Part shown: one piece after another, positions 5,028 to 61,360 of the stretch | How the letters are laid out: each line of letters begins with the position of its first letter | Position numbering within the stretch: the first letter of the stretch is position 1 | From: Octopus bimaculoides | Taxonomy: Eukaryota | Assembly (NCBI RefSeq): GCF_001194135.2 | Contig: NC_069003.1 | Span: 5,327,208 to 5,391,207 of the forward strand | DNA length: 64,000 nt | Direction of reading: 5' to 3' | Notes under the pieces: model-generated | What the model was told of the DNA's origin: nothing | The model's input: only the letters and a program-made list of their open reading frames with translations | Databases searched by the model: none | Program-made: the position numbers and the translations under genes

Positions 5028-5074
<47 letters not shown>

Positions 5075-5084
5075 NNNNNNNNNN

Positions 5085-5129
<45 letters not shown>

Positions 5130-5264
5130 GAGTAGCTCCACTACTTTTGCTACCTCTGCATGACCCCCTTGCATATTTTTAAGTTTGGTGCTGGCACCTT
5201 TTCTATTATTCTCTTCTGTTAAATCACTAAGTTACAAGGATGGAAACAAACCAACAATACAGTT

Positions 5265-5525
5265 CTATATTTAAGAGATGAGGAATTATTTACATTATTT
5301 ACATTCGACGGATATTTGTCCTCATCTTCTTTGTTGTTAACACAACATTTTGGCTGATATACCCTCCAGCCTTCATCAGGTGTCTTGGGAAAATTTCAAA
5401 CCCGGTTTCTCATTCGTAAGGTATTTTTCGATGTTACTATTATTATTATTATCATTCAGGTCACTGCCTGGAATTGAACTCAGAATCTTGGGGTTAGTAG
5501 CCCACACTCTTACCACTACGCCCAC
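5265..5525 (-). mobile_element. tRNA-headed Penelope-type element, left arm of inverted dimer; hammerhead core decayed
   Basis: Minus strand reads ggcgtagtggtaagagtgtgggctactaaccccaagattctgagttcaattccagg (A/B boxes), (AAT)n, then gacac-ctgatga-aggctg..cagcc-aaaa-tgtt-gtgtt; inverted match to 5526-5851. Confidence 0.8.
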
Positions 5526-5584
5526 GAGCATATGGCATAGTGGTTAAGAGCACGGGCTATTCTGAGTTCGATTGCAGACAATAT

Positions 5585-5693
5585 AACCCATGCTAGCATG
5601 GGTTGGACGAATTGACTGAGGACTGGTGAAACCGGATGGCAACACCAGGCTCCAAATCTAAATTTGGCAGAGTTTCTACAGCTGGATGCCCTT
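5585..5693 (-). mobile_element. Family C (V-domain-like) SINE fragment inside the right arm
   Basis: ccatgctagcatgggttggacg...tttctacagctggatgccctt; same motif at 53290-53395, 29020-29130, 60790-60880. Confidence 0.8.
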
Positions 5694-5762
5694 AATAATA
5701 ATAATAATAACAACATCAAAAAATACCTTAGGAATGAGAACCCAGGTTCGAAATTTCCCCAA

Positions 5763-5808
5763 GACACCTGATGAAGACTGGAGGGTATATCAGCCGAAAC
5801 GTTGTGTT
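5763..5808 (+). ncRNA. Minimal type I hammerhead ribozyme motif
   Basis: Stem I gacac(5763-67)/gtgtt(5804-08); CUGAUGA 5768-74; extra A 5775; stem II gactg/cagcc with one mismatch; GAAA 5796-99; palindromic stem III AACGUU; predicted GUU cleavage after 5803. Confidence 0.75.
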
Positions 5809-5954
5809 AACAACAAACAAGACAATGACAAATATCTGTCAAACCAACAAGCAGTGGAGAGACAAATACAAAGATACATACATTATATATAGGTGTGTGT
5901 GTGTGTGTGTGTGTGTGTATGAGTTTATAGATATGTATATACATGTGTGTGTAT

Positions 5955-12008: not shown

Positions 12009-12069
12009 AAATTAGTGTCAACCAAACAGAAACTATTGTCTACAAAGATGTTTTGTAATTGTATTGATA

Positions 12070-12357
12070 TTATCGAAAGGAATATTTCCCACTTCCTGAT
12101 GTTTAGTGCGTCTTTCTTCCAACCAGTTCATCGGGCTTGACACAAGTATCGTTCTTCTTCCTCTGTTTCTTCTTTTCCCTTCAATCTTTCCGGTCTTTGC
12201 TAAATTCTCCAGGTCCTCTTTCCTCATCACATGACCAAGAAACCTCAGTTGCTTGGCTCTTATCTCACAAAGCAGTTTCCTATTTACCAAGGCCTGCATC
12301 ATCACTTCTTCATTAAACACTTTGCCAGTCCATCCCATCCTCAATATCCTCCTTATA
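12070..12357 (-). mobile_element. RTE-clade LINE 3' fragment
   Basis: RRILRMGWTGKVFNEEV...QLRFLGHVMRKEDLENLAKTGKIEGKRRNRGRR is typical of the RTE ORF C-terminus. Confidence 0.88.
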
Positions 12358-12363
12358 TACACA

Positions 12364-12590
12364 CACGACGGGGGTGCTGGAAAGTTCATGACTTTGGGTA
12401 AAAGAAAATACAGGAGGAGGATCAGTTAATTTATGATTTTATTCTACATATTCCCCTCTCAGATTCACACACTTATTGCAGCAATCCTTCAGTTTTTCTG
12501 AGTCCTGTAAAAGAACTCTGAGGGTTGGGCCTCCAGCCAGGCCTTTCACGATAGCCTTAAGGCCCAAAACTTTTCAGTACCCCACTCATA
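12364..12590. mobile_element. Mariner-type MITE
   Basis: Imperfect TIRs acgacgggggtgctggaaagttc / aaacttttcagtaccccactcata, ending in TA. Confidence 0.75.
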
Positions 12591-17919: not shown

Positions 17920-18062
17920 TGGTTGGTGTTAGGAATGAAATTCAGCCATAGAGCCCATATCAATACAGACAATGCAAGCCTGGTGTGGCTCCTGTCAAAC
18001 TGTCCAACCCATGCCAGCATGGAAAAACAGACATTAGAAGATGATGATGACGATGATGATTA
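17920..18062 (+). mobile_element. Family C SINE tail
   Basis: ctgtccaacccatgccagcatggaaaaacagacattagaagatgatgatg. Confidence 0.8.
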
Positions 18063-28984: not shown

Positions 28985-29190
28985 CATTGTCATCGTCATC
29001 ATTTAGTGGCCCCTTTCCCATGTTAGCATTGGTTGGATGGTTCGACAAGAGTAGATAAGCCAGTGGGCCACACCAGATTCTAAATCTACCTTGGCTTGGT
29101 TTTCTACAGTTGAATGCCCTTTGTAATGTCAACCGCTTAACAGAGAGCACTGGGTGCTTTTTATGTGGCACCAGCACTGGTGAGGTTGCC
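28985..29190 (-). mobile_element. Family C SINE 3' part
   Basis: (CAT)n, ccatgttagcattggttgga, ttctacagttgaatgccctt. Confidence 0.75.
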
Positions 29191-32712: not shown

Positions 32713-33050
32713 AGACCCCCTTCAGTCACAAATGACCATGGGTTTGCACCTAGAAAGTTACCCTCCAAGGTATAAGTTTGGGCAAGGTTGTTTATGGAAG
32801 ACTAGCAGTCACTCATGCATACCGGCCTCCACTCTCTCCACACCACCGATGTTATCCAAGGGAAAGGACAAGGGGCCGATACAGCTAGGCACCAGTGACG
32901 TCGCAACTCATTTCTACAGATTAGTAAACTGGAGCAACGTGGAAATAAAGTGTCTTGCTCAAGAACACAACACACAGCCAGGTTCGGGAATCGAACTCAC
33001 AACCTCAGGATTGTAAGCCCGATGCTCTAACCACTGAGCCACACATCTTC
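32713..33050 (-). mobile_element. SINE family D, full length
   Basis: Minus head tggctcagtggttagagcatcgggcttacaatcctgaggttgtgagttcgattccc is clearly tRNA-like (A and B boxes). Confidence 0.9.
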
Positions 33051-51263: not shown

Positions 51264-51785
51264 CTATATTTTTGAGGTGAGGAATTATGTACATTATTTA
51301 CAATGAATGGATAGATGTTCTCATCTTGTTTGTTGTTACTGCAACACTTCAGCTGATGTACTCTCCAGCCTTCATCAGGTGTTTTGGTGGAATTTCAAAC
51401 CCAACCCTTTATTTGACTAATGGGGTACTCTCTTCTCATTTGAAAGGTATTCTTTTTCACTGATGCTATTTTTTCTGTTGATATCATTCCCCAAGTAGGC
51501 TACGGGCATATAGTGTAGTGGATAAGAGTGCAGGCTACTAACCCTCAGATTCCGAGTTCAATCCCAGACAGGGACTCGAAAAGATAATATCAACAGAAAA
51601 ATAACATCAGCAACATACCTTAGGAATGAGAAAAGACGACCCCATAAGCCAAATAAAGGGTTGGGTTCAAAATTCCACCAGAACACCTGATGAAAGCTGG
51701 AGAGTACATCAGACGAAATGTTGTGATAATAACAAACAAAGTGAGGACACCTATCTGTCTATTGTTAATAATGTAGAGTAATTTT
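51264..51785. mobile_element. Second inverted dimer of the tRNA-headed Penelope-type element (variant subfamily; hammerheads decayed)
   Basis: Minus tail 51264-51490; plus head gggcatatagtgtagtggataagagtgcaggctactaaccctcagattccgagttcaatccc at 51504; plus tail with aacac-ctgatga(51687)...gaaa(51715)-tgtt-gtgat. Confidence 0.8.
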
Positions 51786-52053
51786 TATTTGAAAACACCA
51801 AAGTGGAGATTATTTATTATCGTTTTTATTCATTCATTTTGCCAAAAGATACAGCCACGTATTTTTGATTATCTTTTGTTGGTGTTAGCAAGGGCATCAA
51901 GCCATAGAAACCAAACCAAAAATACAAAGTGCAAGCAAGATGTGTCACTGCCACCCATCTAAGGGAGCAACAAAGCTCCCTATGTCACCCATACTAGCAT
52001 GGAAAATAAATGTCAAACAAAAAATGATTAGGATGATGGCAGGGATGACGGTG

Positions 52054-53254: not shown

Positions 53255-53395
53255 ACTCATCATCGTCGTCGTTTAACGTCCACTTTCCATGCTGGCATGG
53301 GTTGGATGATTTGACTGAGGACTGGCAAGCCAGAAGGCTGTACCAGACTCCAGTATGATCTGGCAAGGTTTCTACAGCTGCATGCCCTTCCTAAT
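53255..53395 (-). mobile_element. Family C SINE tail with V-like domain
   Basis: tttaacgtccactttccatgctggcatgggttgga...ttctacagctgcatgcccttcc. Confidence 0.85.
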
Positions 53396-60756: not shown

Positions 60757-61360
60757 TATCATCATCATCATCATTTAATGTCTGTTGTCCATGCTGGTAT
60801 GGGTTGGACAGTTTAACCAGAGCTGGGAAGCTGGAGAGCTGCACCAGGTTCCAGTCTGATTTGGCTTGACTTCTACATGCCAACCACTTCATAGAGTGTG
60901 CTGGGTGCTGTTATGTGGCACTGCAAGGGTGCATGGGCACTTTTATATGGCACTGCACAGGCACTTTAACTTGGCACCACCTCTGTGAGACCCAACTTTC
61001 AAGTGTTGGGCCCCATGGAGGCAATTACTGACACCTTTGGCATTATGTTGCGCTTGAGAAGAAGACCCATCGAGTTGAGCAAAATTGCAGTCATGGCAGA
61101 TAATGATCTTGCACAAATGGCACCAATGAGTGACATGTAAAAGCACCCTGGTGTCACACAAATGGCACCTGTGCCAGTGGCACATGAAAGCACCCATTAC
61201 ACTCTTGGAGTGGCTGGCATTAGGAAGGGCATGCAGGCATAGAAAACTATGCCAAATCATACTGAAGTCTGGTGTAGTCTTCCAGCTCTCCAGCTCCGGT
61301 CAGACTGTCCAACCCATGCCAGCATGGACAATGGATATTAGATGATGATGATGATGATGA
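60757..61360. mobile_element. Inverted pair of family C SINE tails (both tails pointing outward)
   Basis: (CAT)n-ccatgctggtatgggttggacag at 60770-60810 versus ctgtccaacccatgccagcatgg-(GAT)n at 61305-61360. Confidence 0.75.

What the first reader, a model, noticed from the sequence alone, without database searches (positions are those of the whole stretch)
5265..5851. tRNA-headed, hammerhead-bearing element arranged as a head-to-head inverted dimer: a possible Penelope-mobilised SINE
Seen: each ~260-nt unit has a tRNA-like head (A box tggcgtagtgg, B box gagttcgattcc-like), an (AAT)n spacer, and a tail without poly(A) that contains a hammerhead core. The two units lie head-to-head as a palindrome, and the architecture recurs at 51264-51785. 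Established: minimal type I hammerheads with a palindromic stem III, and inverted terminal copies, are hallmarks of Penelope-like elements (PLEs); SINE tails usually derive from LINEs. Inference: a Pol III-driven, self-cleaving non-autonomous retroelement using PLE machinery. I do not know of a description of this combination, but I cannot search to confirm novelty.
Basis: partly seen in the sequence, partly recalled or inferred. Interest (0 to 1): 0.9.

Follow-up and report, generated by a model that had tools for sequence, protein, structure and literature searches.

The report
tRNA-headed SINE with Penelope-type tail
Two old insertions of a roughly 270-base non-coding mobile element, probably in an octopus genome, start like a tRNA, end like a Penelope-type retrotransposon with its minimal hammerhead motif, and each went in as a back-to-back pair; this is an interesting variant of known elements, not a new kind.

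Summary
Window 5263-5840 and 51262-51774 are the only two loci of this family, and both are head-to-head inverted pairs. Each whole pair is flanked by a ~15-bp target-site duplication, so each pair went in as one event. The unit is a tRNA-derived head (A and B boxes, no cloverleaf), a linker, and a ~170-nt tail. The tail carries a minimal type I hammerhead that fits every published feature of Penelope-like-element (PLE) hammerheads. That motif was never found in 1000 shuffles of the window. A 44-nt extension at only one outer end, and an inverted partner that is 5'-truncated at locus 2, are further PLE insertion signatures. Three arms begin within 4 nt of tRNA position +1, which argues for a defined RNA 5' end.

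Best reading (0.6): a Pol III SINE that borrows a PLE 3' recognition module and integrates by reverse transcription primed from both target strands.

No autonomous partner or further copies could be retrieved. Schistosome Sm-alpha SINEs, retrozymes and paired opposite-strand minimal hammerheads are already published.

The parts
5248..5262 (+). Locus 1, left target-site duplication (AAACCAACAATACAG)
   Evidence: Matches 5841-5854. The best direct repeat between the flanks was reached by 1 of 500 shuffles. Coordinates.
5263..5529 (-). Locus 1, left unit, full length (267 nt): tRNA-derived head, (AAT)n linker, hammerhead tail, 44-nt terminal extension
   Evidence: The 5' end falls at predicted tRNA position +1 (5529), from the alignment to the Rfam tRNA hit.
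5263..5306 (-). 44-nt terminal extension ('tail'), present on the left arm of locus 1 and absent from the right arm
   Evidence: In the alignment the right arm stops at ...ATATCTGTC. This matches the PLE tail found at one end only.
5339..5384 (-). Minimal hammerhead, locus 1 left copy (decayed: G12A, C15.2U)
5460..5529 (-). tRNA-derived head of the left unit; A box 5513-5523, B box 5470-5481
   Evidence: Local alignment to the RF00005 hit at 33048-32979 gives z = 10.1. Coordinates. No cloverleaf is detected.
5526..5840 (+). Locus 1, right unit (315 nt, chimeric): head with a 13-nt deletion, foreign repeat fragment 5588-5693, (AAT)n, hammerhead tail ending at the short 3' end
   Evidence: It shares a 4-bp junction overlap (GAGC, 5526-5529) with the left unit.
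5763..5808 (+). Minimal hammerhead, locus 1 right copy; core intact, one helix II mismatch; predicted cleavage between 5803 and 5804
   Evidence: This is the only window sequence that passes the descriptor. There were 0 matches in 1000 shuffles.
5841..5854 (+). Locus 1, right target-site duplication (AAACCAACAAGCAG)
51247..51261 (+). Locus 2, left target-site duplication (AGAGTAAGTTTTCTA)
   Evidence: 12 of 15 bases match 51775-51789. The score was reached by 3 of 500 shuffles.
51262..51489 (-). Locus 2, left unit: 5'-truncated (no head), with the full 44-nt terminal extension (51262-51305); hammerhead at 51338-51383 (A15.1G)
51490..51503 (+). 14-nt filler between the two arms of locus 2 (CCCAAGTAGGCTAC)
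   Evidence: Read directly from the sequence. It partly repeats the head motif AGGCTAC.
51504..51774 (+). Locus 2, right unit: starts at tRNA +1; head with A box 51511-51521 and B box 51554-51565; hammerhead at 51682-51727 (G10.1A, C15.2U); 3' end 15 nt into the extension
51775..51789 (+). Locus 2, right target-site duplication (AGAGTAATTTTTATT)

Best explanation
This is a non-autonomous retroelement: a SINE with a tRNA-derived head whose 3' ~170 nt mimic the pseudo-LTR/ORF junction of a Penelope/Poseidon-type PLE. That module comprises a minimal hammerhead, an AC-rich hairpin and a terminal 'tail'. It lets the element be copied in trans by a PLE reverse transcriptase / GIY-YIG endonuclease.

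Proposed cycle:
(1) Inferred: RNA polymerase III starts at tRNA position +1, directed by the internal A and B boxes.
(2) Inferred by analogy with Poseidon_Ac: the PLE protein binds the hammerhead-proximal 3' module.
(3) Shown as a footprint: the target is nicked on both strands about 15 bp apart, which gives the duplication.
(4) Shown as a footprint, with the mechanism inferred: both nicks prime reverse transcription. Each starts at one of alternative internal sites, so the outer ends differ by 29 to 44 nt of 'tail'.
(5) Shown as a footprint: the two cDNAs run towards the RNA 5' ends and are joined head-to-head. At locus 1 the join is a 4-bp overlap. At locus 2 it is a 14-nt filler next to a 5'-truncated arm.

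The hammerhead is most likely kept as part of the structure the protein recognises, or acts only with protein help or in trans. It is probably not a cis-acting processing site. Both loci are old, decayed copies.
For: Hammerhead. The architecture matches every non-descriptor feature listed for PLE minimal hammerheads. It shares GAA-ACGU-H with Poseidon_Ac. It did not occur in 1000 shuffles. The MFE fold of the 64-nt consensus contains helices I and II. 84% of cells are paired, against 50% or less for slid registers.

Single-event insertion. Duplications of ~15 bp flank each whole pair (p about 0.002 and 0.006).

PLE footprints. The insertions show an inverted adjacent copy (5'-truncated at locus 2) plus a one-sided extension, reported as 30-40 bp and 44 bp here. 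Poseidon protein cleaves and extends both strands, and starts reverse transcription at two internal sites that delimit the tail.

Defined 5' end. L1-left, L1-right and L2-right start within 0-4 nt of tRNA +1.

Two RNA templates. The arms of a locus share subfamily indels but differ in structure. L1-right carries a chimeric insert. L2-left lacks the head that L2-right has.
Against: There are only two loci (four arms), and all are decayed. No compensatory base changes are seen. Rfam and ARAGORN do not recognise a hammerhead or a tRNA. No PLE reading frame is in the window. No further copies turned up in the 24-kb Octopus vulgaris locus, the two metagenome loci or the public contig scans. So a partner sharing the tail is not demonstrated, and Pol III transcription is not demonstrated. 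The whole-tail fold is not unusually stable (z = -0.77). The tail is 44 nt, slightly outside the published 30-40. The locus 1 target is not AT-rich.
Confidence: 0.6

Rival explanations
1. These are simply 5'-truncated insertions, or a Pol II-dependent non-autonomous derivative, of a PLE whose pseudo-LTR happens to contain a tRNA-derived segment. The tRNA-like part would be a passenger with no Pol III role, or would define the 5' end through RNase P-type processing.
For: Dispersed minimal hammerheads are usually read as truncated PLEs. Non-autonomous PLE derivatives without Pol III heads exist, such as MRC1 and the non-LTR retrozymes. The heads fail the tRNA covariance model at E<=10.
Against: Three arms from two independent insertions start within 4 nt of tRNA +1. 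Random 5' truncation should not do that. Nothing PLE-like lies upstream of any head, and tblastn finds no PLE coding remnant. Both A and B boxes are kept at a normal spacing.
Confidence: 0.2
2. This rival accepts the same element but proposes a different origin for the pair. One cDNA reached the RNA 5' end, snapped back and copied itself. So the pair would be a hairpin cDNA made from one template, not two priming events.
For: At locus 1 the junction lies exactly at the RNA 5' end with a self-complementary 4-bp overlap. In both loci the arm without the full extension is the right one.
Against: L2-right carries a complete head that L2-left lacks. L1-right has a 106-nt foreign block and a 13-nt head deletion that L1-left lacks. 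A self-copy would start out identical. Extension from both strands is shown biochemically for Poseidon.
Confidence: 0.12
3. This is an ordinary LINE-mobilised tRNA SINE. The hammerhead-like motif is a coincidence, and the inverted pairs arose by LINE-type twin priming.
For: Octopus genomes are rich in tRNA SINEs and LINEs. Inversions are known for L1 (my own knowledge).
Against: The full minimal-hammerhead descriptor was never met in 1000 shuffles. There is no poly(A) or LINE-type 3' repeat. Twin priming gives an inversion within one copy, not two full units with outward-facing 3' ends and a one-sided extension. The tail has no match to other repeats in the window.
Confidence: 0.05
4. This is a foldback or MITE-type DNA transposon with ~200-bp terminal inverted repeats.
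For: There are long inverted arms and flanking duplications.
Against: The duplications are ~15 bp and imprecise in length. The two termini of one insertion differ by 44 nt (locus 1) and by 29 nt (locus 2). The inner parts differ between the arms.
Confidence: 0.03

Closest known systems
Sm-alpha / Sj-alpha SINE-like retroposons of schistosomes
   Same: Short non-coding elements with a tRNA-derived, Pol III-type head and a type I hammerhead.
   Different: Those carry a canonical hammerhead that Rfam-type models recognise, and they often sit in direct tandem arrays where the ribozyme releases monomers. The element here has the helix-III-less minimal variant that Rfam misses. It sits in inverted pairs with PLE-type ends. 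It comes from a different phylum.
[quoted passage not shown]
   Same: Helix I of 4-5 bp, CUGANGA, an unpaired base before G10.1-C11.1, a long helix II, and GAA-ACGU-H. An inverted partner copy and a one-sided tail are also shared. Pairs of motifs 100-700 bp apart on opposite strands were already noted.
   Different: There is no RT/EN reading frame here. The unit begins with a tRNA-derived head instead of PLE sequence. There is no detectable primary-sequence similarity to Poseidon_Ac beyond the motif.
Metazoan non-LTR retrozymes
   Same: Non-coding, hammerhead-bearing elements proposed to parasitise PLEs.
   Different: Retrozymes are direct tandem repeats with canonical type I hammerheads and are expressed as circular RNAs. 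No tandem arrangement is seen here, and a single ribozyme per unit lies 37-81 nt from the 3' end.
Non-autonomous Chlamys elements (MRC1) of Chlamydomonas
   Same: Non-autonomous PLE derivatives that share only the 3' end with autonomous families.
   Different: They have no tRNA head and no canonical hammerhead, they form pseudo-LTRs and head-to-tail arrays, and they come from the green lineage.
tRNA-derived SINEs of cephalopods (tRNA-Core, tRNA-Deu; the OK/OR families of Ohshima and Okada 1994, cited from memory)
   Same: A tRNA-derived head with A and B boxes, a length under 350 nt, and target-site duplications.
   Different: Their tails are LINE-derived or simple repeats. I could not compare sequences because no Repbase, Dfam or SINEBase copy is available here.

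Membership tests
PLE-type minimal hammerhead (Cervera and de la Pena 2014) | Conserved core CUGANGA ... GAAA with H17 after U16.1 | tested here: met
   The consensus and the copy at 5763-5808 have CUGAUGA, GAA, A15.1, U16.1 and U17. The other three copies each carry 1-2 core or core-adjacent mutations.
PLE-type minimal hammerhead (Cervera and de la Pena 2014) | [quoted passage not shown] | tested here: met
   There is an extra A after CUGAUGA. Helix II is GGCUGG/UCAGCC (6 bp) and helix I is GACAC/GUGUU (5 bp). 84% of cells are paired, against 50% or less for slid controls.
PLE-type minimal hammerhead (Cervera and de la Pena 2014) | No helix III loop; palindromic 15.2-16.2 | tested here: met
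   ACGU follows GAA directly in L1-right. It reads AUGU or GUGU in the other copies, and the two AUGU copies are consistent with CpG decay. Poseidon_Ac also has ACGU.
PLE-type minimal hammerhead (Cervera and de la Pena 2014) | Covariation across family members; self-cleavage as a dimer | tested here: inconclusive
   Only four related sequences are available, with 0 compensatory pairs. Cleavage cannot be tested in silico.
Non-autonomous derivative mobilised by a Penelope-like element | PLE insertion signature: an inverted 5'-truncated copy at the 5' end, a 30-40-bp tail at one end, and a duplication around the whole complex | tested here: met
   Both loci show it. The extension is 44 nt at 5263-5306 and is missing on the right arm. 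L2-left is 5'-truncated. The duplications have p about 0.002 and 0.006.
Non-autonomous derivative mobilised by a Penelope-like element | 3' end shared with an autonomous RT + GIY-YIG element of the same genome | not testable with these tools
   No PLE reading frame is in the window. The source genome is not searchable. Contig scans and protein routes gave no copies.
tRNA-derived SINE | Internal Pol III promoter (A and B boxes) in a tRNA-related 5' region | tested here: met
   A box GGGCGTAGTGG and B box GAGTTCAATTCC lie 31 nt apart. Similarity to the in-window RF00005 hit gives z = 10.1, 8.4 and 4.2.
tRNA-derived SINE | Recognisable tRNA cloverleaf | tested here: not met
   There is no tRNA hit at E<=10 in either locus. 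ARAGORN finds none even at lowered thresholds. This is common for old SINE heads and is not disqualifying.
tRNA-derived SINE | Defined 5' end at the transcription start; short length; target-site duplication; many dispersed copies | tested here: inconclusive
   The 5' ends at +1 in three arms, unit lengths of 267-315 nt and the duplications are all met. Only two loci could be examined, so copy number is unknown.
tRNA-derived SINE | Transcription by RNA polymerase III | not testable with these tools
   No expression data are available.
Non-LTR retrozyme | Direct tandem repeats of ~170-400 nt, each with a canonical type I hammerhead, giving circular RNAs | tested here: not met
   No direct tandem copies are present. 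No Rfam hammerhead match is found.
Sm-alpha-type SINE-like element | Canonical hammerhead with helix III and loop-loop contacts, recognised by the Rfam Hammerhead_1 model | tested here: not met
   No Hammerhead family match at E<=10.
Foldback / MITE DNA transposon | Identical precise termini and a short duplication of fixed length | tested here: not met
   The termini differ by 44 nt (locus 1) and 29 nt (locus 2), and the duplications are 14-15 bp.

The most novel reading that the evidence does not exclude
This would be the first explicit SINE/PLE partnership. A Pol III tRNA-derived SINE has captured the ~170-nt hammerhead-to-tail module that a Penelope/Poseidon reverse transcriptase recognises. 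Its head-to-head pairs, with the duplication outside and the tail on one side, would be in vivo footprints of the two-strand cleavage and extension so far seen only in vitro for Poseidon_Ac. Families like this could account for part of the thousands of 'orphan' minimal hammerheads in invertebrate genomes.
Probability: 0.4. Interest if true: 0.65.

Novelty: new variant of a known kind. Interest (0 to 1): 0.5.

Why it matters
PLE integration is the least understood mechanism among retrotransposons. A 270-nt natural substrate would delimit the RNA determinants that the PLE enzyme needs. It would also give a compact reporter for retrotransposition assays. The inverted pairs bounded by one duplication would be genomic support for reverse transcription primed from both strands.

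The finding would add PLEs to the list of SINE partners. SINE classifications I know of list only LINE clades (my own knowledge; Repbase and Dfam were not checked). It also suggests the hammerhead is kept for protein recognition rather than for cleavage.

Practically, such palindromes give false microRNA-precursor hits and can disturb assembly and repeat annotation in cephalopod genomes.

Tried and rejected
(1) Rfam at the gathering threshold on the whole window, and at E<=10 on both loci, gave no hammerhead or tRNA at the loci. It gave only weak mir-885 and similar hits caused by the palindrome.

(2) ARAGORN found nothing at the default threshold and only noise at lowered thresholds.

(3) I tried to fetch more copies by searching a translated reading frame of the element. 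There was no candidate.

(4) A LINE remnant at 12036-12425 gave only three metagenome proteins at 49-58% identity. I fetched the contigs of two of them (L001, L002); they are unrelated to this genome and hold no copies.

(5) An octopus rhodopsin query gave a 24-kb Octopus vulgaris locus. It shares window repeats at 85-88% identity but holds no copy of the element.

(6) Exact-pattern scans of the prokaryotic genome, viral and metagenome contig collections gave 0 hits.

(7) An exact look-up of a window ORF to identify the source record found nothing on record.

(8) tblastn with Poseidon_Ac protein against the window and the loci found no PLE remnant.

(9) A relaxed CUGANGA descriptor on the window, L003 and L001 found no other minimal hammerheads. 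The script stopped with an error before reaching L002.

(10) Folding the whole tail gave an unremarkable z-score of -0.77. Cofolding did not recover the 4-bp intermolecular helix III.

(11) I first thought the head derived from tRNA-Arg, from memory. I dropped this: the nearest testable relative has a Val-type (UAC) anticodon loop, so the source tRNA is left open.

(12) Eight literature searches found no description of a tRNA-headed SINE with a PLE-type minimal hammerhead. Lunse 2017 and Ferbeyre 1998 were not held. The cap on papers was reached.

Full report
WHAT IS THERE

The window is eukaryotic: 38% G+C, dense microsatellites and 3369 N. It shares repeats at 85-88% identity with a locus on an Octopus vulgaris chromosome. 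It is therefore most likely from an octopod. Recognising its commonest repeats as octopus SINEs rests on my memory only.

BLAST of the finding against the window shows exactly two loci of this family, 5263-5840 and 51262-51774, and both are inverted pairs. A 30-nt degenerate hammerhead pattern hits four times, once per arm, and never in shuffles. A covariance model built from the four copies finds only those four in the window, at 80-87 bits against 13 or less for everything else. It finds none in three other loci.

ANATOMY OF THE UNIT

This comes from the alignment and the coordinates. The best-preserved arm, locus 1 left on the minus strand (5529 down to 5263), reads as follows.

- A ~70-nt tRNA-derived head, with A box GGGCGTAGTGG and B box GAGTTCAATTCC.
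- A linker, GAATGAT(AAT)n.
- About 65 nt of unique sequence.
- The hammerhead: GACAC CUGAUGA A GGCUGG-AGGGUAUA-UCAGCC GAA ACGU U GUGUU.
- An AC-rich hairpin, GUUGU-GUUA-ACAAC, which overlaps the 3' strand of helix I.
- About 25 nt ending in ...AUAUCYGUC.
- A further 44 nt ending in ...UAAAUAUAGAA.

There is no poly(A).

The two loci belong to different subfamilies. Both arms of locus 2 carry a 27-nt block that both arms of locus 1 lack, and only locus 1 has the AAT run. Tail identity is 88.6% between the arms of locus 1, 80% between the arms of locus 2, and 76-80% between loci. So both are old insertions, and locus 2 is the older.

IS THE HAMMERHEAD REAL?

Rfam finds none, even at E<=10. But the published minimal hammerhead of Penelope-like elements lacks helix III, so those models do not capture it. 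Cervera and de la Pena list features that emerged beyond their search descriptor:

- a conserved G10.1-C11.1 pair;
- a long helix II and a short (4-5 bp) helix I;
- palindromic positions 15.2-16.2.

The consensus here has all of them. The Anolis Poseidon_Ac element, whose ribozyme has been tested, has the same layout: ACCU CUGAGGA U GCCUGCC...GUGGGC GAA ACGU C.

I wrote a descriptor from those features. The consensus passes it strictly. The copy at 5763-5808 passes with one helix II mismatch. There were no matches in 1000 shuffles of the window. A relaxed version finds no other such motif in the window.

The minimum-free-energy fold of the 64-nt consensus contains helices I and II. 84% of pair cells are standard pairs, against 50% or less when partners are slid.

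Limits. With four related copies there are no compensatory changes. Three of the four copies carry inactivating or weakening changes: G12A, A15.1G, G10.1A and C15.2U.

IS THE HEAD tRNA-DERIVED?

No cloverleaf is detectable. However, the heads align significantly (z = 10.1, 8.4 and 4.2) with a sequence at 33048-32979 that passes Rfam's tRNA gathering score. The match runs through the D arm, anticodon arm and T arm. That alignment places tRNA position +1 at 5529 (left arm, locus 1), 5526 (right arm, locus 1) and 51504 (right arm, locus 2). All three arms begin there, within 0-4 nt. The source tRNA cannot be named.

INSERTION FOOTPRINTS

Each whole pair is flanked by a direct repeat:

- Locus 1: AAACCAACAATACAG / AAACCAACAAGCAG (5248-5262 / 5841-5854).
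- Locus 2: AGAGTAAGTTTTCTA / AGAGTAATTTTTATT (51247-51261 / 51775-51789).

These scores were reached by 1 and 3 of 500 flank shuffles. Each pair is therefore one integration event.

The 3' ends face outwards and the 5' ends meet in the middle. At locus 1 they overlap by the self-complementary GAGC. At locus 2 a headless, 5'-truncated left arm is joined to a full-length right arm through a 14-nt filler.

The outer ends are unequal. Both left arms carry the 44-nt extension. The right arm of locus 1 stops before it, and the right arm of locus 2 stops 15 nt into it.

This matches published descriptions of PLE insertions: heavy 5' truncation, an inverted 5'-truncated copy abutting the 5' end, and a 30-40-bp 'tail' at one end only. 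Biochemistry of Poseidon_Ac supplies a mechanism. The protein cleaves and extends both DNA strands. It starts reverse transcription at two internal RNA sites downstream of the hammerhead. The stretch between those sites is the tail.

MOST LIKELY MECHANISM (confidence 0.6)

The element is a Pol III-transcribed SINE whose 3' module imitates the pseudo-LTR/ORF junction of a Penelope/Poseidon-type element, so the PLE enzyme copies it in trans.

Shown as sequence footprints: staggered nicks about 15 bp apart, priming from both sides at alternative start sites, and head-to-head joining of two cDNAs.

Inferred: Pol III initiation at +1, binding of a PLE protein, and the existence of the partner.

Two templates fit better than a snap-back of one cDNA, because the arms of a pair differ structurally (head present or absent; a 106-nt foreign block in one arm only).

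ROLE OF THE RIBOZYME

The two ribozymes of a pair lie on opposite strands. One transcript therefore cannot contain two sense copies, and the pair cannot supply the dimeric active form. A read-through transcript would instead fold into a long hairpin.

Cleavage after U17 would also cut the body from the last 37-81 nt, where reverse transcription must start. For Poseidon, ribozyme mutants insert normally, and the ribozyme cleaves only with protein present.

I therefore think the motif is retained mainly as part of the structure the enzyme recognises. This is inference.

RIVALS

- A truncated PLE, or a Pol II-dependent PLE derivative with a passenger tRNA-like piece (0.2). The coincident 5' ends at +1 in two independent events, and the absence of any PLE sequence upstream, argue against it.
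- Snap-back origin of the pair (0.12).
- A LINE-dependent SINE with a chance motif (0.05).
- A foldback DNA transposon (0.03). Unequal termini and ~15-bp duplications argue against it.

COMPARISON WITH WHAT IS KNOWN

- tRNA-derived, hammerhead-bearing SINE-like elements exist in schistosomes: Sm-alpha and Sj-alpha, with a canonical ribozyme and tandem arrays.
- Non-LTR retrozymes are proposed non-autonomous PLE derivatives.
- Non-autonomous Chlamys elements share 3' ends with autonomous PLEs.
- Pairs of minimal hammerheads 100-700 bp apart on opposite strands were noted in Schistosoma in 2014.

What I did not find in eight searches of the held literature is a tRNA-headed SINE carrying the PLE-type minimal hammerhead and PLE insertion footprints, in cephalopods or elsewhere. 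Repbase, Dfam and SINEBase could not be consulted. The family may already be catalogued, for instance among the octopus SINEs described in 1994, without the ribozyme having been noticed.

VERDICT

I rate it a new variant of known kinds, of moderate interest (0.5). The evidence is limited to two decayed loci and no identified partner.

Noticed in passing
window 5588-5693: The right arm of locus 1 contains a ~106-nt fragment of a different, abundant repeat between its head and the (AAT)n run. Other copies lie at 29017-29127, 53287-53395, 61219-61327 and 17994-18022. In those copies homology extends on both sides and starts next to an (ATC)n run, so the fragment here is internal and probably antisense. 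It could be a template switch, a filler or a chimeric subfamily. This is unresolved.
   Followed up: partly
window 32979-33048 (-) and 47187-47240: The only Rfam tRNA hit in the window (33.2 bits, Val-type UAC anticodon loop, imperfect T stem) has an 87%-identical partial relative at 47187-47240. It is probably the head of another tRNA-derived SINE family. It is the nearest testable relative of the heads studied here.
   Followed up: partly
window 5498-5559: The head-to-head junction of the two tRNA-like heads forms a hairpin. It gives weak Rfam microRNA-precursor hits on both strands (mir-885 at 27.1 and 24.9 bits, mir-253), far below gathering scores. These are false positives caused by the palindrome.
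   Followed up: yes
window 12036-12425 (-): A decayed C-terminal remnant of a LINE reverse transcriptase. Its nearest proteins in the 5.8-billion-protein collection are only 49-58% identical and come from ENA metagenome assemblies. Of the two contigs fetched (L001, L002), L001 also holds Helitron- and endonuclease-like genes.
   Followed up: partly
window 5038-5125 and 5890-5925: Locus 1 lies between a (CT)n tract, interrupted by a 10-N gap at 5076-5085, and a (GT)n tract. A microsatellite insertion bias is reported for the Naiad and Chlamys PLEs, but microsatellites are so dense in this window that this may mean nothing.
   Followed up: no
window 51490-51503: The 14-nt filler CCCAAGTAGGCTAC between the arms of locus 2 repeats the head-internal motif AGGCTAC, and CCCAAG resembles the anticodon-arm sequence of the locus 1 head. 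It may be a short template-switch product.
   Followed up: no
window 5263-5330 (-), also 51262-51330 (-): In the centroid fold, GAUGAGGA just downstream of the AC-rich hairpin pairs with UUCCUCAUC near the 3' end. This encloses the short 3'-end site and most of the 44-nt extension. The locus 2 copy keeps 6 of 8 pairs without compensation, and the overall fold z-score is unremarkable (-0.77).
   Followed up: partly
locus L003 2060-2240 and 7480-7680 (Octopus vulgaris OX597836.1, upstream of rhodopsin): Long (AAT)n microsatellites flank the O. vulgaris rhodopsin gene. They were the only matches of the element in that 24-kb locus, so AAT runs are a general feature of the genome and not a marker of this family.
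   Followed up: yes
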